Below, one piece after another: positions 14,776-31,594 of a stretch of DNA of 64,000 nt. The notes beneath the pieces are model-generated. The model made no database searches and had not been told where the DNA came from. It saw only the letters and a program-made list of their open reading frames with translations. The stretch is taken from positions 62,001-126,000 of IMG/VR virus record IMGVR_UViG_3300028364_000014; one strand, written 5' to 3'. Position numbers and translations under genes: made by a program. Numbering within the stretch: the stretch's first letter is position 1; the number at the start of each line of letters is the position of its first letter.

Positions 14776-15060
14776 ATGGCAAACAGTGACGATTTTTATC
14801 AATTTCTCAATTCTTATAATTGTTTTGAGAATTTCTGTGTAGCACTTGACGAACAACATGCTACAACTTTTAATGATTTAATGCGTGATTCAAAAGATTC
14901 AAAAGATTTAATTAAAATAATAGATTATTCGATAACTTGGGATGAAACACACGAAGGCAGTGATTATTGGTCAAGTATTAATTATGATTGGACTAATTCA
15001 TGTAAAACGGGTATATTTATTAAAACTGGACTAAATTGTAATAATATTTGGGAGCGATAA
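14776..15060 (+). CDS. small protein, paralog family A, ends CNNIWER
   Basis: F..FL...FC..L...W..T.EG..YW pattern. Confidence 0.75.
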   Translation: MANSDDFYQFLNSYNCFENFCVALDEQHATTFNDLMRDSKDSKDLIKIIDYSITWDETHEGSDYWSSINYDWTNSCKTGIFIKTGLNCNNIWER

Positions 15061-15062
15061 AA

Positions 15063-15341
15063 ATGTCAGCTACATTAAAAGATATTACTAATTTTATTGC
15101 TTTTCTTGAACAAAAAGGAGCTTATCACGAATTTTGTGAGGAAAGTAATCGTCAAAAAAACAATTCTTTTACAAAAACAGTTAATGAGAATAAAAAGAAC
15201 CTCGATAGAATAATTGATCGTGCATTTACTTGGGAAAATACTATTAGTGGATCAAATTATTGGGCAAGTAAGTCTAGTGAATGGGAAATTGTTTTTGAGA
15301 AAGGTATTAGTCTTACAGAAGGTTGTAGAAGTATTTGGTAA
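15063..15341 (+). CDS. small protein, paralog family A, ends CRSIW
   Basis: same family pattern. Confidence 0.75.
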   Translation: MSATLKDITNFIAFLEQKGAYHEFCEESNRQKNNSFTKTVNENKKNLDRIIDRAFTWENTISGSNYWASKSSEWEIVFEKGISLTEGCRSIW

Positions 15342-15350
15342 GGAGATAAA

Positions 15351-15632
15351 ATGTCGGCAAGTAAAGAAAAATTTATATCTTTTCTAATTAATGAGGATTA
15401 CTATAAAAATTATTGTGATAATGTATTAATACAAAGGGGTTTAACTTTTACGGGTATACTTGCTCAAAATATAACATTTAATATGACAGACATGATAAGT
15501 ACTTCTTTTGAATGGGATAAAACACCGGAAGGTCAATATTTTTGGCAGAATATAAATAAAAAATGGCTTTGTGTATGTAATAATGATATAAAGCTCAATA
15601 CAGGTAATTTTAATTGTAAAAGTATATGGTAA
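15351..15632 (+). CDS. small protein, paralog family A, ends CKSIW
   Basis: SFEWDKTPEGQYFW. Confidence 0.8.
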   Translation: MSASKEKFISFLINEDYYKNYCDNVLIQRGLTFTGILAQNITFNMTDMISTSFEWDKTPEGQYFWQNINKKWLCVCNNDIKLNTGNFNCKSIW

Positions 15633-15642
15633 GGAGGATCTT

Positions 15643-16650
15643 ATGGGTAAACTTACTATTATTGGTGGAACTAAGAATAGAAAATCAAGTGTTATTGATA
15701 AAATATATAATTCATTCATTGAAACAAACAGCTTTAAATATATTGAACTACATAATGGTAAGATTATCCCAAAAGATATAAGTAATAGTAATCTTACTAT
15801 TTGGATGCCGGACATTGCTAACGAAGAACCAAAACATTATCCCGTTAAAAAACAAGGTTCTGTACTTATATGTTCAAAAGTAATACACAATGATAGAACA
15901 AGAATTGACGCTATAACTCGTATATTTAGAATGCATGGAAATGCTGTTATAGCCATTAGAAAAATAATAAACAATAGTTTTGAATTTGAATTAATTGATG
16001 CGCTTGGAAATACTTGGTGTAGAACTATAGATATACTTGAATTAGTTCATACAATAAACTCTTTGTATAAATGGACCAAAGAATCAGTACGAAAAAGTCT
16101 TAAACATAATGAGCTTCCTGATAATGTTTTTAATGGCGTGGATTATAAAGAACTACAAATTTTTATGAATATTAATCAATTAATAGCACTTAAAGTAGCA
16201 GAAGGTTGTGGTAATAGGTTTTTTGGTAACTATAGTACTAGATGTACAAAATTATTTCCAAGTACAAGAAGGAATAAAAATTATTTTTTCTTTTCTCCAC
16301 GTAATACAGATAAAAGGTTTGTTACGATAAAAGATTTAGTACTTACAGATAACCAATATTATTATGGGAATAGAAAACCGTCTGTAGATACTCCAGCTCA
16401 AATAGAACTATATCAACAGATGCCAAAAATTAATTGGATAATTCATGGTCATGCCTATATTAAAAATGCCCCTATTACTGAAAAATATTTGCCTTGTGGT
16501 GATATGCGTGAAGTAGTTGAAGTTCATCGTGTAATAAGAAAAATTAATACTAATCGAATTAATTTAAAAAATCACGGGTTTTTACTTATAGGGAAAAATG
16601 TCGAAGATATGCAAAATCACCTCGACGATTGTAACTTTCATGCTTTATAA
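15643..16650 (+). CDS. class II aldolase/adducin-like domain protein
   Basis: GNYSTR, KPSVDTP, IIHGH, LKNHGF. Confidence 0.7.
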   Translation: MGKLTIIGGTKNRKSSVIDKIYNSFIETNSFKYIELHNGKIIPKDISNSNLTIWMPDIANEEPKHYPVKKQGSVLICSKVIHNDRTRIDAITRIFRMHGNAVIAIRKIINNSFEFELIDALGNTWCRTIDILELVHTINSLYKWTKESVRKSLKHNELPDNVFNGVDYKELQIFMNINQLIALKVAEGCGNRFFGNYSTRCTKLFPSTRRNKNYFFFSPRNTDKRFVTIKDLVLTDNQYYYGNRKPSVDTPAQIELYQQMPKINWIIHGHAYIKNAPITEKYLPCGDMREVVEVHRVIRKINTNRINLKNHGFLLIGKNVEDMQNHLDDCNFHAL

Positions 16651-16978
16651 TAGTAGAGAGGAGAATTGAAAATGCTTATTGCATTTAGTGTAGTATTATC
16701 ATTAATTCTTACTGTATTAGCTTCAACATCAGTTCTTATTAAATTTATTTCGTTTCTTAATTACAGTGAGCTTGATAAAGAAATTGATAACTACAAAGGT
16801 ATCAAAAAAAATTATAACTCAGTAAAAGAATTATATATTTTTATAATTTGTGGAAGTTGGTTAATAACTGTATTTTTTTTTAATTAAAAGATATAAAAAC
16901 ATAGTATAATGTGATACTCAAAAATATTATTTTCTAAAGGAATACTAAATCCAGTTAGACCAGGTATAAAGGCATATT

Positions 16979-17245
16979 ATGGATACTAAAACTAATTTTA
17001 AAAATTTCTTAATTCAAAAAGATTACTTTGAAAAATATTGTTTGAATTTAAAAAAACAAAAAAATAAAACATTTGATGAGTTTATAAGTACTCAACAAAG
17101 ACCACTATTAGGCGTAATAAATAGCTCATTTACTTGGTATAAAGCCCTAGAAGGGGGAGATTTTTGGAGAAATGTTAATGATGAATGGGATTCAGCACTA
17201 ATGAATAAAGTAATTTTTAATCTTAAATATAGGAGTATTTGGTAA
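16979..17245 (+). CDS. small protein, paralog family A, ends YRSIW
   Basis: SFTWYKALEGGDFW. Confidence 0.8.
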   Translation: MDTKTNFKNFLIQKDYFEKYCLNLKKQKNKTFDEFISTQQRPLLGVINSSFTWYKALEGGDFWRNVNDEWDSALMNKVIFNLKYRSIW

Positions 17246-17476
17246 AGTAAATACTATATTTAAAAATTATTTTAATAATCATAGAAAATTTAATAAAGGT
17301 TTTAATTTAAAATTTGCTATGAACAAAGCACTAGAGCTTGCGCAAATTATACTTATGTATGAAGATTTAGAAGAATGTGTAATTACACATAAATTTATAT
17401 GTCCACATAAAATTATTAGTGGTAAACATTGTATTTATTGTAAAATACCAGACTTATTTCCTTTAGGGAGGTAATT

Positions 17477-17728
17477 ATGTCAAAAGAGCTTGAAATAATT
17501 GAAATGTATAAAACCCATCATAGATCTTTTAGAATAACTATTAAATATGAAGATATTGATGATTATTATAATTCTACTACTGAAAAAGTATTCAAGAATG
17601 TTTGTCTTTGGGGTGGACCAGATGGATATGATATTAAAGAAAAAACTATATCTTATGAAATGGATGCTCTAATTATGCCATGGATAAAGAAAAGATTTTC
17701 TATGTATATTAGTGATAAATTATTATGA
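17477..17728 (+). CDS. hypothetical protein
   Basis: RBS ggagg, ORF. Confidence 0.6.
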   Translation: MSKELEIIEMYKTHHRSFRITIKYEDIDDYYNSTTEKVFKNVCLWGGPDGYDIKEKTISYEMDALIMPWIKKRFSMYISDKLL

Positions 17729-19038
17729 GATAGATATATTACTAGAAACTTAGATAATAAAAGAATTTTATCTTCTAAAAGAATTAAGGATTAATTATGC
17801 AGTTTAAAAATTTTATAGGTAAAACAATACTAGATATAGATGAAACTAGTGTTAATTGTATTGGTGTTATATTTACAGATGGTACTTGTAAGAATATTTT
17901 TGCTGAGCCTGTGAATAATATACCTGAACTATATGTAGAAAAAGCTGACTCAATTTCTATGCATGTAGTAAATATTTTTAATTTTAGTAAAGATTTTGAT
18001 AGAATCATGACTATAGCTAAAAGTATTGGTAATATTACTACAGAAAGTACAATATACAGAACAGTGGAGTTTAAAGATAGAAGTAAAATATGTATAAATA
18101 AAAAGAAAAGGCTTATTATAGAGGATTTTTAAATTAAGGAGATATAAATAATGTCTAGAAAAGAACTAAACAATATTTTAAATCAAATTGATGCAGAAAG
18201 AAAAAAAGAAGAATTAAAAAAACAAAGTGAGAATGAAAATAAAAAATAATCTTTCTAGAAAACTATCACGTGTAAACTAATATACATAAATAGGTGAAAT
18301 AAATTACATGACAAAAAAGAAAGTATATAAAAATAATTTTATTAATGATGGAGAAACAGTGTCAGTATTGCCTACTATTTGCAGAACTTGTTACGGTTTT
18401 AGTAATTGGAACGGTGATCGAAGTAAGGTTATATATGAAGATCGAGATTGTGTAAATTGTAAAAATAAAAGAACAATAATATGTTAATAATTAATACAGG
18501 AGTAAATTAGATGTATAAGTTTTTTATATTTATTATGGTAGTACTAATATATATATTTTCTGTAGGAACAGCAATATTTGGTATTCATTGTTTAATGCAG
18601 TCATTAATGATATAGGTATTCTTAAAGGATTGTAATGAAAAATAAAGTATATGGTATAGTGAATAATGATAAAAAATCTGTAGGTATCGTACATAATAAT
18701 AATTACAGTGAAATTTTATTACTAACTAATTTTTCGCCCAAAAATAAAGCATTGGAAATTATCAGTGAGTATTGTAGAAAGAAAAATATAAGTTATTTTT
18801 ATTTTACATGTACATATACAAAAGACAATGAAACTATTTATAAATCCTGTGATACTTGTGGAACATATGGTCCTATAATTGCATTTAAATATTTATTTAA
18901 TCCTTATGCTTGTAATGAATATAATTTTACTTGTGAGTATTGTATGAATATACTAAAATTAGAAAGAGAAGAGTTGAATTATATAGAGTATGAAAATTAT
19001 TATTATGATTAAAAAAAATAAAAGGAGGAGAAAGTAAA

Positions 19039-19332
19039 ATGGATTTTGAAAACGATGATATAGTCGTTAAATTAAAAGATTTTAAATGCGCAGAAAAAGG
19101 ATATAATATAGGAAAAAGTAATCCAGCAATTAATACTAAATACGAGTGTTGTGGTAAAATTATAGATTTAGAAGACCATAATATAACAAGAGAAGAAACG
19201 ATTAATGTTATAGAAAAAGGAAAAATAATTGATAATTATGGATTTGAAGTACAATGGGAAAATGAAAGTATTAATTCATATGAACTAGATGATTTAGTTT
19301 TAGTGTATAAAAAATACAGAACAATATGGTAA
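19039..19332 (+). CDS. small protein, family B (SH3/MIB-HERC2-like), ends YRTIW
   Basis: KSNP..YEC.G.I...VQWEN..NSY..DDL shared with 25886..26176. Confidence 0.7.
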   Translation: MDFENDDIVVKLKDFKCAEKGYNIGKSNPAINTKYECCGKIIDLEDHNITREETINVIEKGKIIDNYGFEVQWENESINSYELDDLVLVYKKYRTIW

Positions 19333-19463
19333 TAAGGAGAAATAAAATGAATGAACATCAAGACGATGATAAACTTGATATTATAGACACACAAACGTGT
19401 ACATGTGGTTATCCATTAGATGAGTGTGGTTCTTGTACTGATGGTATGTGCGAGGAAGATTAA

Positions 19464-20609
19464 ATGGCTGAACATAGATTAGTAACAATTGAAAAAATAA
19501 CTAAAGTTACTGAACATCCAAACGCGGACAAACTTGATATTGTAGATATACAAGGATGGCAATGTGTCACACAAAAAGGAGTATATAAAAAAAATGAAAT
19601 TGTAATATATTTTCATATTGATTCTATATTACCAGTAGACATCGAAAAAAGAATATTTGGTCCCGACGCAAAAATAACATTAAATAAACATAGAATACGT
19701 GCTATAAAAATACGCAGTATGCTTTCTTATGGACTAGTAGTACCGATAAGTCTTTTTAGTGATTTAATTAAAGATGAAAAAGTCAATGATGATGTTACAA
19801 ATATCTTTAAAGTTACAAAATACGAACCTATAATAAATAAAAAGAACATTTTATATGTAAATAGACAGAAAAAAAGATATGAAAATCCAAACTTTAAAAA
19901 AGTAAGAAAACCAGAAAGACTTTCAAACTATAAAGGGTGTTTTGATGGCAAAGAAGTAATGATAACTGAAAAAATCCATGGAACATCATGTAAAGTAGGC
20001 TGGGTTCTAAGACCTAACAATACTTGGAAAGAAAAACTTATTGTTAAACTTTTTGGTAATTATCAATTTGTATATAGAACTATGAAAGTACAATTACAAA
20101 AACATGACACGATCATGGATAAAATTTTAACTAAAATAGGAATAAGAAAATATAAAGGGTATTATAAAGATATAAATCATGGTAATGTTTATGCAAAAAT
20201 GGTTAATCAATATGAATTAAAAGAAATTATTTCATCTGGTTATGAAATAGCGTTTGAAATATATGGGAGTAGAATTCAAAAAAATTATACTTATGGATTA
20301 AAGCATAATGAACATAAAATGGTAGTATATGCAGTAATAAAAGATGGTAAATATTTACCTCCACATGATGCGTATGCTTTCTGTGAAATTCATAAATTAC
20401 CACATGTTCCTATATTATATATAGGCATATTCTCTAATGACGAACTGAATAGATGTACAGTTGGAGTAAGTGTATTAGATCCAAATACAAAAGTAAGAGA
20501 AGGATGTTGTATTGTACCACTAGACGGAAAACCATTATGGATGGGAAAAGAAGTAATGAAATCAATCAATCCATACTATGAACTTAAAAATCAAACAGAA
20601 TATAATTAA
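19464..20609 (+). CDS. RNA ligase, Rnl2/DRB0094 family with N-terminal OB domain
   Basis: HPNADKLD N-terminus, motif I TEKIHGTS, FEIYG..IQKNY, REG, KSINP. Confidence 0.85.
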   Translation: MAEHRLVTIEKITKVTEHPNADKLDIVDIQGWQCVTQKGVYKKNEIVIYFHIDSILPVDIEKRIFGPDAKITLNKHRIRAIKIRSMLSYGLVVPISLFSDLIKDEKVNDDVTNIFKVTKYEPIINKKNILYVNRQKKRYENPNFKKVRKPERLSNYKGCFDGKEVMITEKIHGTSCKVGWVLRPNNTWKEKLIVKLFGNYQFVYRTMKVQLQKHDTIMDKILTKIGIRKYKGYYKDINHGNVYAKMVNQYELKEIISSGYEIAFEIYGSRIQKNYTYGLKHNEHKMVVYAVIKDGKYLPPHDAYAFCEIHKLPHVPILYIGIFSNDELNRCTVGVSVLDPNTKVREGCCIVPLDGKPLWMGKEVMKSINPYYELKNQTEYN

Positions 20610-20640
20610 CAATATGAAAAATTTTAAAAGATAGTAAATT

Positions 20641-20910
20641 ATGACCAAAAATCAAATAAAAAGACTCTATGATTTTCTTATTCAAAATAATTGCTATAAT
20701 GAGTATTGTATAGCCTTAGTAAAAGCAAAAGACACAACATTTGAGCAATTTACAAACAACCATTACTCGGCTCCTGCGGCATTAAGTTCACCATTTTCTT
20801 GGGCAAATACAAATGAAGGATTTAATTTTTGGATAAAATTAAGTCGTTTATGGCATGATGAGTGCGAATTGACTAAAAAAGCACATTCAATTTGTAAAAG
20901 TATTTGGTAA
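20641..20910 (+). CDS. small protein, paralog family A, ends CKSIW
   Basis: FSWANTNEGFNFW. Confidence 0.8.
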   Translation: MTKNQIKRLYDFLIQNNCYNEYCIALVKAKDTTFEQFTNNHYSAPAALSSPFSWANTNEGFNFWIKLSRLWHDECELTKKAHSICKSIW

Positions 20911-21168
20911 TTAATTATAATTTATAATCAATGAGGAGAATTAAAATGGAAAAACAAATTGAAAATCAAAAAAAAATCTTTAGTGTAGTTAAATGTTTAA
21001 ATAAACTAGATAATTGTGATAAAAAATGTCATGTTTGTGCAGTACAAGAAGGATGTGATAATCTATGTAGTTATGCAGTAAAAAACAATATAAATGAAAA
21101 AACCCAATGTATTTATTGGGAAAAATAACAAAAAGAATTTAAAAATACCAGAGACAAAGGAAATTATT

Positions 21169-21606
21169 ATGTTTAATAGTAAAAAATTAGTACTATCTCT
21201 ACCAGCACACGAAATAGAATCTGGTGCAGTACAACAAATATCTCAATGTATTGGGGTAGACGTACTTGAAAAATTAGTAATACTACCAGATGTACATCAA
21301 GGATACGATATTCCAATTGGGTCTGTAGCCTTAATAGATGGGTATGTTTGGCCAGGAGCTGTTGGAGTTGATATCGGATGCGGGATGGGAAGTATAAATA
21401 CCCATCACACATTAGAAGAATTGAGTATGTTTAATAAAAATGATCGTATTGAGGTTTTTAAGGAAATACAAAAAATTATTCCTACAGGATATAGCACAGG
21501 AAATGGATATGATTTTAAATCATTTACTAATTATATAAATGATAAAGACTTCAACACTAATGTTATGAGTAGAATGAATATATCTATTGGTACTCTTGGG
21601 GGTGGT
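21169..21606 (+). CDS. rtcB: RtcB RNA ligase, exon 1
   Basis: LPDVHQGYDIPIG, VGVDIGCGM, ends GTLGGG. Confidence 0.9.
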
Positions 21607-21867
21607 AAAATGGTTGCTTCCAGCCCAAGAGGATAATATAAATATACTGAAATCTTTTCTAATTGACTTGGAATCCCACTATAGTAATTATATTGTGGGA
21701 GACAGGGGCGAACCCGAAAGGGACGTTGAGAGACTAAACGAAAAGATATCATCGAAATGGTAAAGCGATAGTCCGAACATCCGGTATAAGGTTTTCCGAA
21801 GCCGGAGAGATAGGCAGAAATGACCTATCCTTTATTTAGATCTATTAAATAAAGTAACAAATAACTG
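21607..21867 (+). ncRNA. group I self-splicing intron (261 nt, no ORF) in rtcB
   Basis: exon ends in U, intron ends in G; R-like gagagactaaacg and S-like aagcgatagtcc; P10 atggtt pairs with exon 2 aatcat; removal restores GTLGGG|NHF in frame. Confidence 0.9.
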
Positions 21868-22557
21868 AATCATTTTCAAAATATTGGAATAAATAATAAA
21901 GGGGAAGTAGGAGTTACTTTACATACAGGAAGTCGTAATCCTGGTAATATAGTAGGTAAATATTGGATGAATAGAGCAAAAAAGGACGGTATAAATTTTA
22001 ATGGTCTATATATGTATCCAATAAACTCTGAACTTGGTCAAGCTTATTATAATGATATGCTATGGGCAATTGATTACGCAGAGTTCAATAGATTTATTAT
22101 TATGAAAAACACTCTTAAACTATTGGGTCTTGATATAAAAAATTATATTAAAGATATGATAAATGAAACTCATAATCATGCAATTCTACTTCCCAATAAT
22201 AAACTTCTCCATAGAAAAGGAGCTACTCAAGCTGAAAAAGGTATAATGGGGGTAATTCCTGCTAATATGAGAGATGGTGTGTATATTACTAAAGGATTGG
22301 GTAATGCAGAATTTCTATCGTCAGCTAGTCACGGCGCTGGTAGAAAATTTTCAAGAACACAAGCAAAAAAGGTTGTGGATTTTGATGCTGTAGTAAATGA
22401 ATTAGAAGAACTAGATATTATTGTTAATATTACTCCTAAAAATAGTGATGAAAATCCAGGAGCATACAAAGACATTAAACACGTATTAAAATTACAAGAT
22501 GGTATTGTTGTAGATATTATTGATCATTTTATACCTAAAATAGTACATATAGGTTAA
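21868..22557 (+). CDS. rtcB: RtcB RNA ligase, exon 2
   Basis: NHF...LHTGSR, HN, HRKGAT, SASHGAGR, DENPGAYKDI; in frame with ORF 21967. Confidence 0.9.
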   Translation, partial: NHFQNIGINNKGEVGVTLHTGSRNPGNIVGKYWMNRAKKDGINFNGLYMYPINSELGQAYYNDMLWAIDYAEFNRFIIMKNTLKLLGLDIKNYIKDMINETHNHAILLPNNKLLHRKGATQAEKGIMGVIPANMRDGVYITKGLGNAEFLSSASHGAGRKFSRTQAKKVVDFDAVVNELEELDIIVNITPKNSDENPGAYKDIKHVLKLQDGIVVDIIDHFIPKIVHIG

Positions 22558-23335: not shown

Positions 23336-23587
23336 ATGAAACGCGGTAATAACTATGTATGGACTAGAACTATAGGTAACAAAAAAATAGGTTCAGTAAG
23401 ATTATTTGATATGGAGGATATTTATTTAAGTAATTGCTTAGATTATGTTTATCGGCAAGTAAGGAGTGATGGTAAATATATAAAAGATAGTATTACTGGA
23501 TATATGTGGATACGATCTATTAAAAATGAATTAAAATGGAGGCATACTTCTAAGAAAACCAGTGGTTGTGATAGTATTTGGAGATAA
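23336..23587 (+). CDS. small protein, ends CDSIWR
   Basis: RBS ggagg, ORF. Confidence 0.7.
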   Translation: MKRGNNYVWTRTIGNKKIGSVRLFDMEDIYLSNCLDYVYRQVRSDGKYIKDSITGYMWIRSIKNELKWRHTSKKTSGCDSIWR

Positions 23588-23608: not shown

Positions 23609-23899
23609 ATGGAGTCCTTACGATTACTTATTGTTATTTTAACAACCATTGCTCTTTTATTTATAATAATTATCTCAGTGTATAACATAGGAAATTTAAC
23701 TATAAAAAAAACACAAAATGAATTAGATAAAAATTCTAAAGATAATTACAAATTACTTTTAGAAATTAAAAAACTTAGAGATGAATTGGAAAAAGATATA
23801 AAAAAAGCTCATTTAGTAGAACAAAACATTCAAGAACAAGAATTAACTTTATTTAATAAAAACAACACAGATAGTTTTGAATATAGAAGCATTTGGTAA
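23609..23899 (+). CDS. membrane-anchored coiled-coil protein, ends YRSIW
   Basis: N-terminal TM helix then heptad-rich segment. Confidence 0.7.
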   Translation: MESLRLLIVILTTIALLFIIIISVYNIGNLTIKKTQNELDKNSKDNYKLLLEIKKLRDELEKDIKKAHLVEQNIQEQELTLFNKNNTDSFEYRSIW

Positions 23900-23917: not shown

Positions 23918-24202
23918 ATGAAACCTAAACTTATTGGTATGTATAAATCAATTTTTGATGAGAAAGAAATAGAAATGCAAGTATTAGATTTAGTTTATAC
24001 TTTAAGTAAAGAAAGACTTTATTTAACTAATTCAAATACTATATTTGATTTAATTATGTCTAGTAACAAATTCTATTCTAAAAAATATAATCTTTTTTGT
24101 ATGTCTGTTAAAACTGGTAATACTACTATAACTTCATTACATTCTTTAGATAATTTGAAATTTATTAATATCGATAAGAAAGGATGTAAAACTATTTGGT
24201 AA
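23918..24202 (+). CDS. small protein, ends CKTIW
   Basis: ORF. Confidence 0.7.
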   Translation: MKPKLIGMYKSIFDEKEIEMQVLDLVYTLSKERLYLTNSNTIFDLIMSSNKFYSKKYNLFCMSVKTGNTTITSLHSLDNLKFINIDKKGCKTIW

Positions 24203-24212
24203 AAGGAAAATT

Positions 24213-24476
24213 ATGAAATCGTATTATAGTAATACAAAAATTTATTTAACTAATTACACAAAAAATTCAATAATATCTAAAATTATTATTATTATACTAT
24301 TATGGGTTGTTGCTACTATTCCTTGTTGGATAGCTATCGGTATCAGTTCTCTACTTGGTGTTACCTCAGGAATAACCGCAGTAATTGCTTTTGGTATATT
24401 TATATTTTTTGCTGGGTCATTTCAAATACTTTTATGGGTATTGGCTATATTTTTAACAGTAACTATATTTCATTAA
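24213..24476 (+). CDS. small membrane protein
   Basis: hydrophobic helices. Confidence 0.6.
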   Translation: MKSYYSNTKIYLTNYTKNSIISKIIIIILLWVVATIPCWIAIGISSLLGVTSGITAVIAFGIFIFFAGSFQILLWVLAIFLTVTIFH

Positions 24477-24941
24477 TTAAAAATAATACTGATTAGTGCA
24501 AGGAAATCTTATGCTTGGTTATGAAAATATAATAAAAATAAAATTATTTGCACAAATATCTTCTGCAATATTAATAATGTTTATATCATTAGTTTATGTG
24601 TTAATTATACCTTTTTTAAAAAAAATACACAATTCCATAAAACTAGAATCTTTTGATTATACACCTAAACTTAATGAGCTGAATACAGGGAATAGTATTA
24701 TGTTTAGAAATTGGGGACAAAATAACATGGAGATACCAGTTAGAACTTATACTTTACTAGATAATAAATTATCAGTAGAGTTTACTAAAGGAGATTACCC
24801 ATATGTTAGCGGCGGTCCAAGTCCAGAATACTCATGGGTTTGGATATCTGAAAAAAATAGAATGGGATGGTCTAATAAAGAACCAAATTCAGTTGTTACG
24901 TTAATATTAAGTGATGGATTTGGTGATATTTGTGATAAAAT

Positions 24942-25883
24942 ATGCAAAGGTGTGTTATGAAATTTGATGTAACAAATTTAGGAATACGTGTTATAGCAAA
25001 TTCGGCAATGTCTAGGTATCCGTCATTATATCGTCCACAAGGAATAGAAGGTACTGTTTTATTTATAAAAAGTAATTTAGATTATTATGAAAAAATACGT
25101 TATATGGTTAAAATGGGCATGGTAATAGAATTAGCTTGTGCTCCTGAAATCGATGTTATAGCAGAAATAAAAGTACGTTGGGATAATAACAGATGTGCTT
25201 GGCATAATCAAGGATCGCTTGTTTATAGATACAGTAAAGGACCCAGATGTAATAGAATATGGTTTAATAATAAATTTCTAATTTCTGAAAGTAATGTACC
25301 GATAAGTATGTTAAAAATTAAAACTATTAATAGAATCCCAAGAAAATTTAAAACTGACTGGGAAGAAAAAGAATACTCATCTTCGATACGAAATATTAGT
25401 ACTTTAACATATTCAAAGTCCAGAGGAACATCTCCTAGTTACTTAGAACGTGGTTTAAAAACCACATATCAACTTAATAGACCTAATAAAAAATACACTT
25501 GCTACCTTGAGGACGAATCTACAGTATCACATAAAAAGCTAGCTAGTTCAAATTTTTTTAAAAAGTATGCAATAAAAAAAGAACCTAATCCATGTATAGA
25601 GATTAATGAATTAGACTTTTCAAAAGAATTAGAATCAATAGTTGAACCAGAATTACCTCATTACTCTTTAAAGAAAGAAACTTTTAATCCGTTTATTACT
25701 GCTACTAAAGATTCTAAAAATTCTAAGAAAATCAAGTCTACTTTAGAGATCAATAAACTTATAAAAAAACCAGTAATTAATCCAATCTCTCCTGAAGAAA
25801 TGAGGAAAATTAAGAAAGCAAACAGTACTTCTTTACGTGAATTTTTAAATAAAAAAGAGAAAAAAAGGAGACGTAAAGTATAA
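24942..25883 (+). CDS. hypothetical protein, N-terminal family B-like domain with internal CNRIW
   Basis: IKVRWDNN; Lys-rich C-terminal half. Confidence 0.6.
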   Translation: MQRCVMKFDVTNLGIRVIANSAMSRYPSLYRPQGIEGTVLFIKSNLDYYEKIRYMVKMGMVIELACAPEIDVIAEIKVRWDNNRCAWHNQGSLVYRYSKGPRCNRIWFNNKFLISESNVPISMLKIKTINRIPRKFKTDWEEKEYSSSIRNISTLTYSKSRGTSPSYLERGLKTTYQLNRPNKKYTCYLEDESTVSHKKLASSNFFKKYAIKKEPNPCIEINELDFSKELESIVEPELPHYSLKKETFNPFITATKDSKNSKKIKSTLEINKLIKKPVINPISPEEMRKIKKANSTSLREFLNKKEKKRRRKV

Positions 25884-25885
25884 TC

Positions 25886-26176
25886 ATGTTTAAAGTAATA
25901 TTAAATACTCGTCGACATGGAATTTCTAAAAGTAATCCAGTATTTGGATCTGAGTATCAATGCGAAGGTATTATAGACAGTTATTACACAAGCGGTTCTG
26001 GTAGAAACATTGGTTGTCCTACCTTAAAAGAATTTATAGATTTAAATACTGAAGGGACTATTAAAGGACTTAACATTCAATGGGATAATGGTACTAATAA
26101 TTCATATAGAATTGATGATTTAACTATTTCAACCACTGATGAATCCGTGACAGGTATATGTAATACTATTTGGTAA
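25886..26176 (+). CDS. small protein, family B (SH3/MIB-HERC2-like), ends CNTIW
   Basis: IQWDNGTNNSYRIDDL. Confidence 0.7.
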   Translation: MFKVILNTRRHGISKSNPVFGSEYQCEGIIDSYYTSGSGRNIGCPTLKEFIDLNTEGTIKGLNIQWDNGTNNSYRIDDLTISTTDESVTGICNTIW

Positions 26177-26186
26177 AGAGGATAAT

Positions 26187-26636
26187 ATGGACTGGAAACC
26201 AGAACAAGATGGATATACACATATTAATATATACTCTAAAGGAAAAACTGTATTAGGATGTTTTTTAACTAACTTTTCTTTTTCTCCTATAATTACTAAT
26301 GATGGTAATTTTCAATCTATTGAAGGTTATTGGTATTGGCTAAGTACTCATGATGAAAGATTACGTACTCTTGTTGGTTGGGATGCCAAAAAACGAGGAA
26401 GAGCGTTGGATAGGCACTTTGAATTTACTGATATAGAATTTCAACAAAAAATAAGAGAAGCGTGTTGGATTAAAATTCACTCTAATCAAGCAATGTTTAA
26501 TTTATTCAAAGAATCTACTATACCATTTACTCATTATTACGTATTCCATAATGGTTTTGCTAAAACTGTTGGGTTTGAATGGCAAGTTGAAATGTGGGAA
26601 CAATTTAGAGTCTATATAAGGAATGGTTATCAATGA
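26187..26636 (+). CDS. conserved large-phage protein, possibly NADAR-related
   Basis: DGYTHINIYSKGKT.LG.FLTNF...F.SIEGYW. Confidence 0.5.
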   Translation: MDWKPEQDGYTHINIYSKGKTVLGCFLTNFSFSPIITNDGNFQSIEGYWYWLSTHDERLRTLVGWDAKKRGRALDRHFEFTDIEFQQKIREACWIKIHSNQAMFNLFKESTIPFTHYYVFHNGFAKTVGFEWQVEMWEQFRVYIRNGYQ

Positions 26637-26868
26637 GTTATTTAATTAAAAAAACATTTAGCTCAATGATAGTTCTCAAGTACGGTGAAAAAGAACGAAA
26701 AATACTAGATGATGTGGTTGCTTTCGATATAATACATTGTATAGAATTAACTTTCTCTTCACTTAATGAATATAATAATAGTAAACATATTAAGGAATTA
26801 AAATTATTTTTACCTGATTATTTTACAATTTTGAATATTAAAAACAAATTAAAGGATAAATTAATAGA

Positions 26869-27798
26869 ATGACTAAAGATATATCAAAACTACCACTAAA
26901 AAAAGTAAAAATTGGGGTAAGTCAGCCAAGTTATAAGGTTAAATGGGCTTTATATCATGATCCTGTGACGGTATTTGAAAATCAAGAATTATCTTTCCCT
27001 AAAGCCATTAATGATGGCACAGAAATACATGATTCAGTGTGTTACTCGTCTGTAATTCATCATTACAAATCACTTAGTAAAGAAAAAAATATACCTAATA
27101 GAATTTACACAGAATTAGATTTAAATCCAGATCCAACCAATAAAAACCTTCCTTATCTTTTAAGAAAAGAGATGAGGGAATGGCTTGAGATTTGTATAGC
27201 CAATTTTACACTCCCAAAAAATATAAACCCTATTAAATCCGTACCTTCTACTAAAAAAGGTATAATGGTTCTTGACTTGGAAACTGCAGATAGTACTTTT
27301 ACTTATCTTTATTTAGCTATGTTCAGACATATTAGAGAATCACCGTCATTAGTAAAATCTGTATTATTTCTTCATAAAGAACATAAATTAGACTTTTATA
27401 TTGCTTATGTTTTAGCGTCCTCTTTTAATGTCACCGGTGAAGGGCATCATCCTATAAAGGTTAATAATAGTCCTTATTGTCATAATAAACCTATACCAAA
27501 ACAGATGTCAGATAACATTAACCTTAAAGCTGCTTGTAGTTTATATAGGGCAGTAAATGAAGAAGGTTTGGTAGATGTAGTTCCTTTAAGTGATGCTACT
27601 AACTGGCTTTGTGGTAATAAAATCAGTGAACTATGTAAAAAAGATTTTATAGTACCAATTTCTGATTTACTAGATGAAGAACTTATTAAAGTAGTTCATT
27701 CTTCTAATGATGAGGAAGCTATTAAACACTTTGAACTTTATAGTCAATTACCCAAACCTAAAGGATTTGGGCTTGCAGTTAATCGCAAGCTGATTTAA
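26869..27798 (+). CDS. hypothetical protein whose 3' end is replaced by the IscB element
   Basis: last codons read into the element left end at 27743. Confidence 0.65.
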   Translation: MTKDISKLPLKKVKIGVSQPSYKVKWALYHDPVTVFENQELSFPKAINDGTEIHDSVCYSSVIHHYKSLSKEKNIPNRIYTELDLNPDPTNKNLPYLLRKEMREWLEICIANFTLPKNINPIKSVPSTKKGIMVLDLETADSTFTYLYLAMFRHIRESPSLVKSVLFLHKEHKLDFYIAYVLASSFNVTGEGHHPIKVNNSPYCHNKPIPKQMSDNINLKAACSLYRAVNEEGLVDVVPLSDATNWLCGNKISELCKKDFIVPISDLLDEELIKVVHSSNDEEAIKHFELYSQLPKPKGFGLAVNRKLI

Positions 27799-28005
27799 TT
27801 CAGGATTGAACAGACGTTTAATCAAAGGCTCACCTACGGATGCCACTCCCAGTCCGTAGCAATGGAGGTAAGCGGAGCATTACAAGTCCTCATTGCTGAT
27901 TAGTAGGTAACGAAGATCAGTATTACTTTTGATTAAGTCGGGGGAGACGAACCGAACTATTGAACTATTCTTAGTTTGCCCGATCAATGGGTTTTTATTA
28001 AGAGG
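27743..28005 (+). ncRNA. omegaRNA (HEARO-like) scaffold
   Basis: structured non-coding leader of iscB: gtcaa...ttgaacagac, ctacggatgccactcccagtccgtag hairpin, gtcgggggagac. Confidence 0.8.
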
Positions 28006-28010
28006 TAAAA

Positions 28011-29501
28011 ATGATTTACATTATAGACGCAAGGAACAAGATAGGTCACCCGACCAAGAAACATGATATGATAGGTCGATTGATCCGAAACGAGAAAGCA
28101 AAGATTATTAAGAGATTGAACAAGGATGTTATGATCGTTCAATTATTAACAAAGGTTTTTTCTAAAAGTGAAACAATTGATTGTGAATTTAGGATAGGTA
28201 TTGATCCTGGATATGCAAATATTGGATTTGCTGTGTTTAAAATACATGGCAACATTATCACTAAACTTATTAATGGAGAGGCATATTTACGAACAAAAAA
28301 AATCAAAGAAGGGCTTGATGCTAAGAGAATGTATCGCCGTAATCGAAGATATATAGCTCGAAAGAATATTAAAAAGAAACATGGAATAGGTCAAGCCAAA
28401 TTCAAACATCCTGTTTGGAAAAATCGAAACAAACATAAGTTTCAACCTACTCATCTTCATTTAATTCAATCGCATGAAAATGTGCTGGCAAAATTGTTGA
28501 AACTAATTCCAATCGAACAAGTTAAAATTCATTTGGAATATAATAACTTTGATTTTCATAAAATGATTAATCCTAAGATACAATCTTTTTGGTATCAAAA
28601 AGGGTTACAGTTTGGTTTTGAGAATATAAAAAGTTATGTGAGGAATCGAGACAACTATCAATGTCAAATTTGCAAAAAGGATGTTGGTAATATCAGGAAT
28701 GAAGTTCACCATATCAAATGGAAAAGTAATGGTGGATCAGATCGACCTGAAAATTTAATATTGTTGTGTGAAGGCTGCCACAACAAGGTCCATAAAAAAG
28801 GATTGAGTTGTCCAGATAGATCTATTTCAGTAAATGGATACCGTAATGCTGGAGTTTTAAATTCAGTTATGGAAACAATATGGAGTAAGTTTGAAGATCA
28901 ATGTCCAGTTCAAGACACCTATGGTTATATCACAAGTGGTGTTCGGAACCGAGACAACATTATTAAATCTCACGACAATGACGCAAGCGTTATTGCCTTC
29001 AACGATAGCTTGGGAAGTCAAAACTTTGAGGATTGTTCTTGGAAGGATTATAGCTCTAAATTAAATATGAATCAGTTCCCCAAGCATACCCGATCATTCA
29101 CATTAAGACATACTGACCGTAGATATGTAATTTTAAATTCTAAATTGCCTGAAAAGAAGAGAACTATAGTGGCTTGGAATCGCAAACGAAGGGCGGGCCA
29201 AGATCCTAAGAAGCAAAGCCTTGCCGAGTTGAAGCAATCTCTTATGATTGATGGAAGATTGAATTCAACGGTTATTGTTGTAATCCCAGGGCAGAAGGTA
29301 ATGAGAAGTTTGATCACTGATTACAAAATTCGAAAAGGTGATGTTGTCAATGTGGAATCAACAATACGAGTCTGTAAAGGTGTGCAAAACAAAGGTACGG
29401 TTGTTACTTTTGAAAATGATTTAAACCCAAAGAAATTAGATACATTTGGAACTAAAAAATGTCATAAAATGATAAACAATTGTGGATTGGTGACTTATTA
29501 A
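28011..29501 (+). CDS. iscB: IscB RNA-guided endonuclease (RuvC + HNH)
   Basis: IGIDPG (RuvC-I), RMYRRNRR bridge helix, HLE (RuvC-II), RDNYQCQIC..HHI..GGSDRPENLILLC..CH (HNH), SHDNDA (RuvC-III). Confidence 0.92.
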   Translation: MIYIIDARNKIGHPTKKHDMIGRLIRNEKAKIIKRLNKDVMIVQLLTKVFSKSETIDCEFRIGIDPGYANIGFAVFKIHGNIITKLINGEAYLRTKKIKEGLDAKRMYRRNRRYIARKNIKKKHGIGQAKFKHPVWKNRNKHKFQPTHLHLIQSHENVLAKLLKLIPIEQVKIHLEYNNFDFHKMINPKIQSFWYQKGLQFGFENIKSYVRNRDNYQCQICKKDVGNIRNEVHHIKWKSNGGSDRPENLILLCEGCHNKVHKKGLSCPDRSISVNGYRNAGVLNSVMETIWSKFEDQCPVQDTYGYITSGVRNRDNIIKSHDNDASVIAFNDSLGSQNFEDCSWKDYSSKLNMNQFPKHTRSFTLRHTDRRYVILNSKLPEKKRTIVAWNRKRRAGQDPKKQSLAELKQSLMIDGRLNSTVIVVIPGQKVMRSLITDYKIRKGDVVNVESTIRVCKGVQNKGTVVTFENDLNPKKLDTFGTKKCHKMINNCGLVTY

Positions 29502-29659
29502 TACTCTTATTACGGTAAATAAATCATATCTAACAAAAACTGCTAAAGCAAAGGCTTATATCCCAAAGCTGAAGCATTGGGTTTTACGGCCTAAAGGCCG
29601 AACCGATAAAAACAATGAAAACAAAGATTTGTAATTTTAAATAAAAAAGGTGGGGTTTA

Positions 29660-30205
29660 ATGAACACAATTTTCGCAATAGAAAAAATTAATAAAACAAG
29701 AGAATATCTTGATAGCATCGAAAAACATATTCTAAATGTAAAAAAAGCATTTGAAATTGTTAAAAACAAATGTTCAGATTTGCCTTTTATGGATAATCTT
29801 TTTTTGCATCATCTTAATATAGAAGTTAGATGTCAAGACAGCACAAAACTTTCTGAGGATGTCTTTATTAAAGATCGTCAAACTTTATATCCAACAAGCT
29901 ATGAGAATTTTCCTGATATAATTGACAACTTAAACGAAATTGATTATCATTATACAAAAGTATGGCCTAAAACTTGTGAAAAACATCCTAAGAGTAAAGA
30001 TATGTATAAACTATATTGCACTCATATGGTTATTAATTGGATGGCAAAAGGATTTGAAAGTAATGAGTCTATTCAAGAATATTATTTAAGAAATCAATCA
30101 GAGATAGAAATTCCCACATATGCAAAAAAATTTGTAGACGAATTAATTTTTCATATCGAATCTCAAATCGAAGAAGACCTCGAAACTTATAGACCGTCTA
30201 TGTAG
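29660..30205 (+). CDS. DUF5662/HD-like protein, degenerate
   Basis: KHILNV..., QDSTKLS in place of HD.SK.S, MVINWMA. Confidence 0.4.
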   Translation: MNTIFAIEKINKTREYLDSIEKHILNVKKAFEIVKNKCSDLPFMDNLFLHHLNIEVRCQDSTKLSEDVFIKDRQTLYPTSYENFPDIIDNLNEIDYHYTKVWPKTCEKHPKSKDMYKLYCTHMVINWMAKGFESNESIQEYYLRNQSEIEIPTYAKKFVDELIFHIESQIEEDLETYRPSM

Positions 30206-30400
30206 TTTTTATTATTGATATTAAACGAAGTGTTTTTATAGGAAGGTCAATGGGCGTTAATTATATTATCAAAGATATTGAATCAAAAGAGGTCAACGGC
30301 ATAAAATGTCCACTAGTAACAATAAAGTTTATTTTATGCCATTAGAAGCAATGAGAAATCCAGCTATACTTATTGGTGCTATGCAAAAGTGAGGTAAAAT

Positions 30401-30790
30401 ATGTTTGATTTGAATTCTTTTATTATTGACGGTATAAAACTCTTTATTCTTGCAATTTTTATTTTTTCATTCATGTCTTTTTGTTTTAAACTTAAAATTT
30501 CTATAGAAAATAATGATTCAGGTAATTTTAGCAGGATTATTTGGAATAAGCGATGGTATATATTTATTATTATAATTTCACTTATTAGTATGATTTCTGT
30601 TTTTAATTTAGAACAAGCGTATCGACCTAAGAATATTTTAACCACTAACACTTCTCCTACAATTATGGGATCAAATGAGTCTCGTAAAATACCTATTAAA
30701 AATATAGAACCAATAAATCGTGAATTAATTTATAAAAAAAATAAACAACAAGGAGAATACGCCAAAAAGATTTTTAAAGACCTTAAATAA
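30401..30790 (+). CDS. membrane protein
   Basis: two hydrophobic helices. Confidence 0.6.
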   Translation: MFDLNSFIIDGIKLFILAIFIFSFMSFCFKLKISIENNDSGNFSRIIWNKRWYIFIIIISLISMISVFNLEQAYRPKNILTTNTSPTIMGSNESRKIPIKNIEPINRELIYKKNKQQGEYAKKIFKDLK

Positions 30791-30829
30791 TTAAATTAAA
30801 AAATTAAAATTTTATTACAGGAGTTAATT

Positions 30830-31276
30830 ATGAAAGGTAATTTAATAGATTTTGCAGAACAAGGTGTTTTTAATGTAATTATACACGGTTGTAATTGTTT
30901 TCATGTTATGGGGGCAGGCATAGCAAAAGAAATCAAATGCAGGTATCCTAAAGCATATGAAGCTGACATTACACACACCATTAAAGGAGATGAAACAAAA
31001 TTAGGGCATTATTCTTACGCACTTATTGAAACTGTAGATAGACCTTTTACTATAATTAATGGTTATACTCAATATGCTTATGGAAAAGGGGGACCACATA
31101 TAAACTATAAAGCTATTCAATCAGTATTTCGTCGTGTAGCAAAACAGTATTTTACTTCTGTTATAGGATACCCTTATATCGGGGCTGGACTGGGTGGAGG
31201 AGATTGGTCAATAATCCAAAAAATTATAAATGAAGAATTAAAAAATATATCTCATCATCTAGTAACATTTAAATAG
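30830..31276 (+). CDS. macro domain (ADP-ribose) protein
   Basis: IHGCNCFHVMGAGIA, YPYIGAGLGGGDW. Confidence 0.9.
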   Translation: MKGNLIDFAEQGVFNVIIHGCNCFHVMGAGIAKEIKCRYPKAYEADITHTIKGDETKLGHYSYALIETVDRPFTIINGYTQYAYGKGGPHINYKAIQSVFRRVAKQYFTSVIGYPYIGAGLGGGDWSIIQKIINEELKNISHHLVTFK

Positions 31277-31306
31277 GAATAATGTAATTAATACTTTATA
31301 TTAAAA

Positions 31307-31594
31307 TTGGTGATTATAATGGGTGATGTCTTTATCGATGTATTTTTCTATGACGATGACTCTGAGGATGAAATCTCAGAATGTGTAGCAGAGTACAATA
31401 AGGTAGATTGGAAGCGTATTGAAAAAAGAATAGTAGTAACTATAGCTGAAGATGGGGATTTTCCTATTAATACAATAAATAGGATTGAAATATACTCAGA
31501 AGATGCTAGTGATGTAATTAAAGTGTATGAATATAGAAACTTAATGAGTTTATTAAAATATGGTTTAGAAAAATGTAACTCTATTTGGCGCTAA
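31307..31594 (+). CDS. small acidic protein, ends CNSIWR
   Basis: ORF. Confidence 0.65.
   Translation: MVIIMGDVFIDVFFYDDDSEDEISECVAEYNKVDWKRIEKRIVVTIAEDGDFPINTINRIEIYSEDASDVIKVYEYRNLMSLLKYGLEKCNSIWR

What the first reader, a model, noticed from the sequence alone, without database searches (positions are those of the whole stretch)
14776..31594. Shared C-terminal [C/Y]-x-[S/T/N]-I-W tag on 11 small proteins from unrelated families: candidate tagging or docking system
Seen: ORFs end CNNIWER (15060), CRSIW (15341), CKSIW (15632), YRSIW (17245), YRTIW (19332), CKSIW (20910), CDSIWR (23587), YRSIW (23899), CKTIW (24202), CNTIW (26176), CNSIWR (31594). The bodies are 5 family A paralogs, 2 family B proteins, a TM/coiled-coil protein and 3 singletons, so whole-gene duplication does not explain it. 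Codons vary (Ser agt/agc/tct, Thr act/aca, Ile att/ata), pointing to protein-level selection, and the tag usually follows a short flexible linker. Inference: variable target-binding domains plus a constant terminal peptide, i.e. an adaptor library docking on one partner (a host AAA+ protease or a phage hub), a virion-loading or export signal, or the recognition site for the phage's carboxylate-amine ligases or a Cys/Trp modifier. I know of no described system with this tag.
Basis: partly seen in the sequence, partly recalled or inferred. Interest (0 to 1): 0.92.

Follow-up and report, generated by a model that had tools for sequence, protein, structure and literature searches.

The report
Shared C-terminal tag on phage proteins
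Eleven small, mostly unrelated proteins of an uncultured jumbo phage all end in the same five amino acids (Cys/Tyr, a polar residue, Ser/Thr/Asn, Ile, Trp); related phages carry the same ending on dozens more proteins, so it looks like an undescribed address label read by one still unknown partner.

Summary
In all six frames of the 64-kb window, [CY]x[STN]IW occurs exactly 11 times. Every hit lies 0-2 residues before a stop, in + strand ORFs of 83-97 aa, where about 0.005 is expected by chance.

The bodies are 5 family A paralogues, 2 family B proteins and 4 singletons. The same ending, [C/Y/F/L][K/R/N][S/T]IW, closes 59 ORFs in at least 30 BLAST-level families across 8 loci from independent metagenomes (about 7 phage lineages, 9-15 per long locus). 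It also closes 35 of 60 single-domain family A homologues in a 1.84-billion-protein library.

Ser is coded by both AGY (30) and TCN (15), and all Ile codons and all three stop codons occur. Selection therefore acts on the peptide, not on a DNA element. The tag follows a polar linker of variable length, and more distant relatives, including a Lak megaphage, lack it.

My reading is a C-terminal docking or address peptide. The receptor is not identified. I rank virion or prohead cargo loading (as in T4 and encapsulins) first and delivery to a protease second. A link to the amidoligase genes is not supported.

I found no description of this tag in the literature. Interest is high and the idea is directly testable.

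The parts
14776..15060 (+). Tagged ORF 1, family A (94 aa). Ends CNNIW plus ER.
15063..15341 (+). Tagged ORF 2, family A (92 aa from the ATG; the ORF opens at TTG 15048). Ends CRSIW.
15351..15632 (+). Tagged ORF 3, family A (93 aa). Ends CKSIW.
16979..17245 (+). Tagged ORF 4, family A (88 aa). Ends YRSIW.
19039..19332 (+). Tagged ORF 5, family B (97 aa; weak Mib/Herc2- or SH3-like beta domain). Ends YRTIW.
20641..20910 (+). Tagged ORF 6, family A (89 aa). Ends CKSIW. The AF2 model is all-helical, with lower confidence over the last 9 residues.
23336..23587 (+). Tagged ORF 7, singleton (83 aa, basic). Ends CDSIW plus R.
23609..23899 (+). Tagged ORF 8, singleton (96 aa) with an N-terminal hydrophobic helix and a coiled-coil-like body. 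Ends YRSIW.
23918..24202 (+). Tagged ORF 9, singleton (94 aa). Ends CKTIW.
25886..26176 (+). Tagged ORF 10, family B (96 aa). Ends CNTIW.
31307..31594 (+). Tagged ORF 11 (likely start ATG 31319), acidic. Ends CNSIW plus R. Orthologues in three other phages at 24-29% identity keep C-x-S-I-W invariant.
24942..25883 (+). 313-aa protein with the tag motif in an internal position. Its family-B-like N-terminal domain ends in CNRIW (residues 103-107, nt 25248-25262), followed by a long low-complexity tail. Orthologues in L126 (CMSIW) and L146 (CKTIW) keep the motif at the same domain boundary.
5788..7512 (+). Lead only. A 574-aa protein with an invariant FFHEAHHA block (HExxH) and a conserved Glu-Glu about 26 residues downstream: a candidate zinc metallopeptidase. 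It is conserved upstream of the tag arrays in three tag-bearing phages and lies next to an SSB-like gene (7946-8860). No link to the tag has been shown.

Best explanation
The pentapeptide [C/Y/F/L]-[K/R/N]-[S/T]-I-W at the carboxy terminus is a short linear docking or address motif selected at the protein level. It is attached by a polar, variable-length linker to many unrelated small domains, so that one common receptor can handle all of them.

Shown:
- The motif is real and hugely enriched.
- It is restricted to the C-terminus.
- It is modular, found on at least 30 body families.
- Its codons vary synonymously.
- It is conserved across phage lineages and absent from more distant relatives.

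Inferred: that it docks on a receptor through the terminal Ile-Trp, with the Ser and the hydrophobic residue at -4 facing the same side of an extended strand. I put this general docking-tag reading at about 0.8.

The specific use I commit to, at about 0.3-0.35, is cargo loading. The tag would recruit a hypervariable repertoire of small effector proteins (83-182 aa, probably host-takeover or anti-defence factors) to a phage-built assembly, most likely the prohead interior, so that they are delivered together with the DNA. The logic matches the capsid targeting sequence of T4 internal proteins and the cargo-loading peptide of encapsulins.
For: - Enrichment and position: 11 of 11 hits are at ORF ends and none elsewhere in six frames.
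- Peptide-level selection: among 49 tags Ser is coded AGY 30 times and TCN 15 times; Ile is ATA 22, ATT 20, ATC 7; Arg uses AGR and CGN; stops are TAA, TAG and TGA.
- Modularity: 56 tagged ORFs fall in 30 BLAST families, and no family mixes tagged and untagged members. Three more tagged ORFs are in L146.
- Family A outside this clade: the domain exists widely without the tag (2417 hits). The tag is on 35 of 60 single-domain hits and on 0 of 90 multi-repeat hits.
- The PHROG profiles for family A end before the tail.
- Tagged family A members cluster on a tree built without the tag columns: 4 changes are needed against 19.3 in shuffles.
- Linker: enriched in K, S, G, N and T; hydrophobic fraction 0.27 against 0.39 in the bodies; variable in length. 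AF2 confidence falls to about 60 over the last 9 residues.
- Orthologues at 24-29% identity keep the tag invariant.
- Arrays of 9-15 tagged genes occur in related phage contigs.
[quoted passage not shown] The encapsulin C-terminal cargo-loading peptide is sufficient for loading unrelated cargo (PMC7355545). An invariant C-terminal Trp docks McdB on carboxysome shells (PMC11321042).
Against: - No receptor has been identified, and no structural (capsid, portal or scaffold) gene was recognised in the 84 kb of this genome that I examined.
- The tagged genes sit among auxiliary genes (NadR, RNA ligase, RtcB, macro domain), not in a recognisable head module.
- Tagged proteins are not uniformly basic (pI 4.1-10.4), unlike T4 internal proteins.
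- Two tagged proteins carry N-terminal hydrophobic helices that fit poorly with encapsidation.
- The T4 targeting sequence is N-terminal and is cleaved off. Here the tag is C-terminal.
- No expression-timing or proteomic data exist, because the phage is uncultured.
Confidence: 0.4

Rival explanations
1. Delivery to a protease. The tag would be either a C-terminal degron that times the removal of early proteins, or the docking end of an adaptor library in which each body binds a different host protein and the tag hands the complex to a host AAA+ protease (ClpXP, Lon, FtsH), a tail-specific or PDZ protease, or a phage peptidase.
For: - The tag is strictly C-terminal: W is the last residue in about 88% of tags, and the few extensions are 1-3 mostly basic residues.
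- The pattern S/T at -2 with a hydrophobic residue at 0 fits the class I PDZ ligand rule (established knowledge).
- Both soluble and TM-anchored proteins carry the tag.
- A candidate HExxH metallopeptidase is conserved upstream of the arrays in three tag-bearing phages.
- The motif is internal at a domain boundary in one conserved protein, which would fit cleavage after Trp.
Against: - No PDZ, Clp, Lon or S41 domain was found by Pfam in the roughly 60 window proteins scanned.
- The ending does not resemble known ClpX, Lon or ssrA-type C-terminal signals (established knowledge).
- I know of no precedent for a phage tagging dozens of its own proteins for degradation.
- The host is unknown.
- The HExxH protein lies next to an SSB-like gene and may serve DNA metabolism instead.
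Confidence: 0.25
2. Enzyme recognition site. The tag would be the substrate motif of a modifying or processing enzyme. Candidates are an amidoligase acting on the terminal carboxylate, modification of the conserved Ser, or cleavage after Trp that exposes the terminus in precursors with extensions.
For: - The window encodes two COOH-NH2 ligases, a GAT-II, two Peptidase_C26 proteins and a GGACT.
- An amidoligase-like gene directly precedes the array in L129.
- Ser at -2 is nearly invariant, 43 of 47.
- Extended or internal variants of the motif exist.
- A macro-domain gene lies within or beside the tag cluster in all four long tag-bearing loci.
Against: - The ligase genes are 12-30 kb from the tags in the window and are absent from the fetched parts of L126 and L136.
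- Such ligase, GATase and C26 sets have other plausible roles in phages.
- Cys is replaceable by Tyr, Phe or Leu.
- Macro domains are common phage accessories.
Confidence: 0.15
3. Common descent or intrinsic role. All tagged proteins would be diverged members of one family whose C-terminus alone stayed conserved, or the pentapeptide would be part of each fold or an oligomerisation or membrane-contact element, with no shared partner.
For: - The size range is narrow, with a median of 91 aa.
- The genes lie in one cluster.
- In the AF2 model of family A the last helix runs into the tail.
Against: - Family A is all-helical, while family B is beta-rich and SH3-like.
- One tagged protein is a TM plus coiled-coil protein.
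- There is no detectable similarity between the families.
- Family A and its PHROG relatives exist widely without the tail.
- Linker length varies within families.
Confidence: 0.05
4. Nucleic-acid element. The conserved 3' end would be a DNA or RNA signal (a recombination boundary for gene cassettes, a translational coupling signal or a terminator) that merely happens to be translated.
For: The tag is usually followed at once by TAA and a Shine-Dalgarno sequence (TAAGGAG), and the genes are tightly packed.
Against: - Ser uses both codon boxes (AGY 30, TCN 15). All three Ile codons, both Arg boxes and all three stop codons are used, and some tags have 1-3 extra residues before the stop.
- The motif is always in frame at ORF ends.
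- The DNA string is not enriched elsewhere in the window.
- An IMG/VR scan for the commonest DNA form returned almost only out-of-frame chance hits.
Confidence: 0.02

Closest known systems
Capsid targeting sequence (CTS) of T4-type internal proteins
   Same: A cluster of small, highly diverse phage proteins share only a short terminal peptide that addresses them to one assembly. The locus is hyperplastic between related phages (PMC3012670).
   Different: The CTS is N-terminal, about 10 residues long, and is removed by the prohead protease. Here the tag is C-terminal, five residues long and usually the true end of the protein. The number of tagged genes per genome (9-15) and of families (at least 30) is much larger. 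Presence in the virion is untested.
Encapsulin cargo-loading peptide (CLP)
   Same: A short, conserved peptide, mostly C-terminal, follows a flexible linker on unrelated cargo proteins. It is sufficient for loading into an HK97-fold shell (PMC7355545).
   Different: The sequence is different. In encapsulins the cargo genes sit in an operon with the shell gene, whereas no shell gene was recognised near the arrays here. Encapsulins have few cargo types per system.
C-terminal docking on AAA+ proteases and adaptors (ssrA tag, XB peptide of SspB), and class I PDZ ligands (S/T-x-hydrophobic-COOH)
   Same: Recognition of the extreme C-terminus on a flexible tail. The S/T at -2 and hydrophobic last residue fit the PDZ class I rule.
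   Different: The ending is not LAA-like. No PDZ, Clp or Lon partner was found in the window. Degradation is untested.
PTS1 peroxisomal signal, and the invariant C-terminal Trp of McdB
   Same: A minimal C-terminal signal on unrelated proteins directs them to a compartment (PTS1). A terminal Trp is needed to bind a protein shell (McdB; PMC11321042).
   Different: PTS1 is a eukaryotic system and McdB is a single-family bacterial system. There is no evidence that this phage builds a compartment, and no chimallin-like match was found for the proteins tested.

Membership tests
T4-type internal protein / CTS system | Unrelated small proteins in one variable locus share only a short terminal peptide. 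| tested here: met
   at least 30 families, one cluster per genome.
T4-type internal protein / CTS system | The peptide is N-terminal and is followed by a prohead-protease cleavage site. | tested here: not met
   The tag is C-terminal. The N-termini are not conserved between families.
T4-type internal protein / CTS system | The proteins are packaged in the capsid and ejected with the DNA. | not testable with these tools
   The phage is uncultured and no proteomics are available.
Encapsulin cargo-loading peptide | A short C-terminal peptide follows a flexible linker on unrelated cargo. | tested here: met
Encapsulin cargo-loading peptide | The cargo gene is adjacent to an HK97-fold shell gene. 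| tested here: not met
   No capsid or encapsulin Pfam or PHROG hit among the proteins scanned in the window and the related loci. Only part of the genome was seen.
ssrA-like / ClpX C-terminal degron | An extreme C-terminal non-polar ending of the Leu-Ala-Ala type. | tested here: not met
   The ending is Ser-Ile-Trp in 43 of 47 tags.
ssrA-like / ClpX C-terminal degron | Tag-dependent degradation. | not testable with these tools
   Needs an experiment.
Class I PDZ ligand | S/T at -2, a hydrophobic last residue and a free carboxylate. | tested here: met
   S or T at -2 in 46 of 47 tags. W is the last residue in about 88%.
Class I PDZ ligand | A PDZ-domain partner is present. | tested here: inconclusive
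   No PDZ hit in the window proteins scanned. The rest of the 238-kb genome and the host were not seen.
CaaX prenylation box | An invariant Cys exactly four residues from the C-terminus. | tested here: not met
   The Cys is five residues from the end and is replaced by Y, F or L in 11 of 47 tags.
RiPP precursor peptides | A conserved leader with a variable core, a short peptide, and an adjacent maturase. | tested here: not met
   The bodies are folded domains of 83-182 aa from unrelated families. No maturase is consistently adjacent.
Ubiquitin-like / Pup-like modifiers | One small-protein family with a Gly-Gly or Gly-Gly-Gln/Glu C-terminus, ligated by a dedicated enzyme. | tested here: not met
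   There are many unrelated families and the ending is Ile-Trp. Ligase genes are not linked to the arrays.

The most novel reading that the evidence does not exclude
The tagged proteins form a phage-encoded adaptor library. Each variable body binds a different host protein, such as a defence or housekeeping factor. The constant Ile-Trp end plugs the complex into one protease or one modifying enzyme (host AAA+ protease, or the phage's HExxH peptidase or amidoligases). This would be a modular targeted-degradation or targeted-modification system in a virus of bacteria.
Probability: 0.15. Interest if true: 0.95.

Novelty: new variant of a known kind. Interest (0 to 1): 0.85.

Why it matters
Terminal address peptides shared by unrelated proteins are rare and have been very useful. 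The T4 targeting sequence and the encapsulin loading peptide became protein-packaging tools, and ssrA and PTS1 defined whole pathways.

Here a five-residue C-terminal signal marks 9-15 small proteins per genome in a clade of uncultured jumbo phages, covering at least 30 protein families of unknown function. Finding its receptor would assign a common fate to a large block of phage 'dark matter' in one step. That fate could be packaging, degradation, modification or localisation.

It would also show how the phage deploys a fast-evolving effector repertoire, and it would give a minimal portable tag for engineering. The claim is directly testable with reporter fusions and peptide pull-downs.

Tried and rejected
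1. Cultured relatives. Megablast and tblastn against INPHARED phages found nothing for the tag region, the 1178-aa polymerase-like protein, a family A protein or the 574-aa protein. Only the 335-aa marker matches, at 42% identity, in the Lak megaphages. The one examined (Lak-B5) has no tags within 20 kb on either side of the marker.

2. DNA-pattern scan of IMG/VR for the commonest tag codons. This did not work as a way to find relatives.

3. The search for related loci with the broad family A alignment failed because no conserved stretch was available. A narrower alignment found nothing in IMG/VR but found six metagenome loci.

5. Body function. Pfam and PHROG gave no functional hit for any tagged protein. 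The family A fold has no PDB match and only uncharacterised phage proteins in BFVD.

6. The 335-aa aldolase-II-like protein embedded in the arrays was rejected as a tag-specific partner, because tag-less relatives also have it.

7. Amidoligase adjacency is not consistent between loci.

8. The sigma-70 promoter and terminator scan was uninformative, with fewer sites than in shuffles.

9. The AF2 model of the 313-aa internal-motif protein is too poor to use (pLDDT 40).

10. The genome-contig scan gave only 27-41% identical relatives of the marker and no host clue.

11. The search for homologous proteins for family A and for the 309-aa neighbour returned only near-identical copies.

12. Tag-less relatives show no alternative shared C-terminus.

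Full report
**1. The observation**

A regex scan of all six frames of the 64-kb window for [CY]x[STN]IW finds these 11 hits and nothing else. Every hit is on the + strand, 0-2 residues before a stop, in an ORF of 83-97 aa. With the window's own amino-acid frequencies, 0.29 hits are expected anywhere in 19,144 residues and 0.005 at the C-termini of 114 ORFs. In 2000 composition-preserving draws no trial gave more than one.

All-against-all BLASTP with the tags removed confirms the grouping of the bodies:
- Family A: the ORFs ending at 15060, 15341, 15632, 17245 and 20910.
- Family B: the ORFs ending at 19332 and 26176.
- Four singletons. One of them (23609-23899) has an N-terminal hydrophobic helix.

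**2. Where the window comes from**

The window is part of a 237,910-bp IMG/VR contig, IMGVR_UViG_3300028364_000014. This is an uncultured, AT-rich jumbo phage. It has no near relative among 50,697 deposited phage genomes.

All 11 tags lie in a 17-kb segment. The remainder of the window and about 9-10 kb of contig on either side of it have none. The segment also holds these genes:
- PnuC and a NadR-like gene just upstream
- an RNA ligase
- a split RtcB
- a DprA-like gene
- a macro-domain gene
- an IscB-like RRXRR-HNH gene preceded by a HEARO-like RNA

**3. Selection acts on the peptide, not on DNA**

I collected 49 tags from the window and eight related loci and tabulated their codons:

| Position | Codons observed |
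|---|---|
| Ser | AGY 30, TCN 15 (two boxes that share no first or second base) |
| Ile | ATA 22, ATT 20, ATC 7 |
| Arg | both AGR and CGN |
| Cys | TGT and TGC |
| Stop | TAA 30, TAG 12, TGA 1 |

Six tags are followed by 1-3 extra residues before the stop.

In the window, ATHTGGTAA occurs 11 times. Eight of these are tags and the other three match the chance expectation of 4.75. A scan of IMG/VR for the commonest DNA form returned almost only out-of-frame chance matches.

**4. The tag is not peculiar to this phage**

A profile of the five family A paralogues, searched against 1.84 billion representative proteins, found 2417 relatives. Of the best 150:
- 35 of the 60 single-domain proteins (135 aa or less) end in the tag. 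CKSIW and YKSIW are the commonest forms.
- None of the 90 longer, multi-repeat proteins does.

I built a tree with the tag removed. On it the tagged proteins cluster: 4 changes are needed, against 19.3 in label shuffles, and 0 of 500 shuffles are as low. A single origin is not excluded. So the homologues do not lack the tag at random.

Contigs carrying such proteins show the same ending on other, unrelated small ORFs:

| Locus | Tagged ORFs |
|---|---|
| L126 | 15, within 7 kb |
| L129/L134 | 11 |
| L136/L146 | 12 |
| L122/L124 | 4-5 |
| L123 | 3 |
| L121 | 2 |
| L127 | 2 |

In total I count 59 tagged ORFs. Clustering 56 of them gives 30 BLAST-level families, and no family mixes tagged and untagged members.

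These loci share synteny with the window. The shared genes are:
- the macro-domain gene
- a 335-aa aldolase-II-like gene
- the peptide deformylase
- GGACT
- Ro60

Orthologues of window ORF 31307-31594 are only 24-29% identical but keep C-x-S-I-W invariant.

More distant relatives share the 335-aa marker at 42-49% identity. These are L130, L132, L133 and Lak megaphage Lak-B5. They have no tags within 10-20 kb of the marker and no alternative shared ending.

**5. Anatomy of the tag**

Position counts from 47 tags, with W as position 0:

| Position | Residues |
|---|---|
| -4 | C 36, Y 8, F 2, L 1 |
| -3 | K 27, R 11, N 8, D 1 |
| -2 | S 43, T 3, N 1 |
| -1 | I 47 |
| 0 | W 47 |
| -5 | often G, N or K |

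The ten residues before the tag are enriched in K, S, G, N and T and depleted of hydrophobic residues (0.27 against 0.39 in the bodies). Their length varies within families.

The PHROG profiles that match family A end before this tail. The AF2 model of family A is a confident helical bundle (pLDDT 85), and confidence falls to about 60 over the last nine residues.

W is the true last residue in about 88% of tags. The extensions are short and mostly basic: R, ER, KY, QRR.

One conserved single-copy protein carries the motif in an internal position. It is 313 aa in the window, 421 aa in L126 and 255 aa in L146. The motif lies exactly at the end of a family-B-like N-terminal domain and is followed by a low-complexity tail. 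Either a free carboxylate is not strictly required, or this protein is cut after Trp.

**6. What the tag most likely does**

The features point to a short linear docking motif read by one receptor:
- a constant terminal peptide on a flexible linker
- many unrelated small domains
- one hyperplastic cluster per genome
- conservation across lineages
- loss in more distant relatives

I put this general reading at about 0.8.

The alternating pattern is hydrophobic, basic, small-polar, Ile, Trp. It fits binding as an added beta-strand with the residue at -4, the Ser and the Trp on one face. The pattern also satisfies the class I PDZ ligand rule. This step is inference.

For the use of the tag I rank cargo loading into a phage assembly first, at about 0.3-0.35. 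[quoted passage not shown] Two further precedents are the encapsulin C-terminal cargo-loading peptide (PMC7355545) and the invariant C-terminal Trp that docks McdB on carboxysome shells (PMC11321042).

Against cargo loading:
- No structural gene was recognised nearby.
- The pI values are mixed.
- Two tagged proteins have TM-like helices.

**7. Rivals**

Delivery to a protease, as a degron or an adaptor library, is nearly as likely (0.25). It fits the strict terminal position. It also gains a lead from a 574-aa protein (5788-7512) with an invariant FFHEAHHA block and a conserved Glu-Glu about 26 residues downstream. This protein is conserved upstream of the arrays in three tag-bearing phages. 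It is one of only two HExxH proteins in the window; the other is the peptide deformylase. It has no Pfam, PHROG or PDB match. It also sits next to an SSB-like gene, so its role is open.

An enzyme-recognition role (0.15) rests mainly on the presence of two COOH-NH2 ligases, a GAT-II, two Peptidase_C26 proteins and a GGACT in the window. These genes are not linked to the arrays, except for one distant amidoligase homologue in L129.

Common descent or an intrinsic structural role (0.05) and a nucleic-acid element (0.02) are disfavoured by the evidence in sections 3 to 5.

**8. Novelty**

A full-text search for the motif strings and for related phrases found no description of this tag. No Pfam or PHROG family captures it.

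In kind, it belongs with terminal address peptides. It differs in its sequence, its C-terminal position in a phage, the number of families it marks, and its restriction to one clade of uncultured jumbo phages.

Limits of this work:
- The receptor, the host and the expression timing are unknown.
- Only about a third of the genome was read.

Noticed in passing
window 27743-27957 and 28011-29501: A HEARO-like RNA lies directly upstream of a 496-aa RRXRR + HNH ORF. The RNA match is to Rfam RF02033 at 45 bits, E 7e-7, which is below the gathering score. This is the arrangement of an IscB / omega-RNA (OMEGA) element, here inside a jumbo-phage genome.
   Followed up: partly
window 698-764: A Pistol ribozyme (RF02679, 49 bits, above the gathering score) lies between two + strand ORFs.
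   Followed up: no
window 21094-22557: RtcB is split into pieces (21094-21636, 21587-21763, 21967-22557) around a 200-nt GC-rich spacer (21764-21966). This could be an intron, a frameshift or a pseudogene. There is no Rfam intron hit at E 0.1 or below. A related phage (L136 14162-15295) has an intact 377-aa RtcB.
   Followed up: partly
window 51000-54536: A 1178-aa single-chain protein has weak matches to both the beta (Rpb2 domain 6) and beta' (Rpb1 domain 2) double-psi barrels. It looks like a very divergent fused multisubunit-type RNA polymerase.
   Followed up: partly
window 57461-59962: A ResIII / Helicase_C helicase is interrupted by an intein with a LAGLIDADG domain.
   Followed up: no
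window 5788-8860: A conserved module is present in three tag-bearing phages. It consists of the 574-aa HExxH protein (candidate zinc peptidase with a long Q/N/P/A-rich linker), a 150-aa protein, and a 304-aa SSB-like protein with a low-complexity tail. The first 9 kb of the window is about 40% GC, against 25-31% for the rest.
   Followed up: partly
window 35205-37338, 43970-47931, 59997-63719: A set of genes for gamma-glutamyl or amide-bond chemistry: GGACT, two COOH-NH2 ligases, two Peptidase_C26 / class I GATase proteins, and a GAT-II. A Ro60/TROVE protein is also present, with no Y-RNA hit in Rfam.
   Followed up: partly
window 45003-45113 and 54656-54766: Two similar 36-codon ORFs (both begin MDSG.ILRCDGN) sit at the edge of the two largest gene-poor stretches (45114-45781 and 54537-55656). 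They may mark a repeated non-coding element.
   Followed up: no
window 20931-21128: A 65-aa Cys-rich ORF ends in QCIYWEK. It may be a degenerate or unrelated look-alike of the tag. I did not count it.
   Followed up: no
window 15643-16650; L147 (Prevotella phage Lak-B5): The 335-aa aldolase-II-like protein has 379 homologues in metagenomes and is 42% identical to a gene of the 540-550-kb Lak megaphages. It is a useful marker gene linking this clade to other huge phages.
   Followed up: partly
L126 2595-3860, L146 6080-6847: The orthologues of the internal-motif protein end in acidic-aromatic tips (…FDDF, …DDNF), reminiscent of SSB-type C-terminal tips. The window copy instead ends in a basic run.
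   Followed up: no
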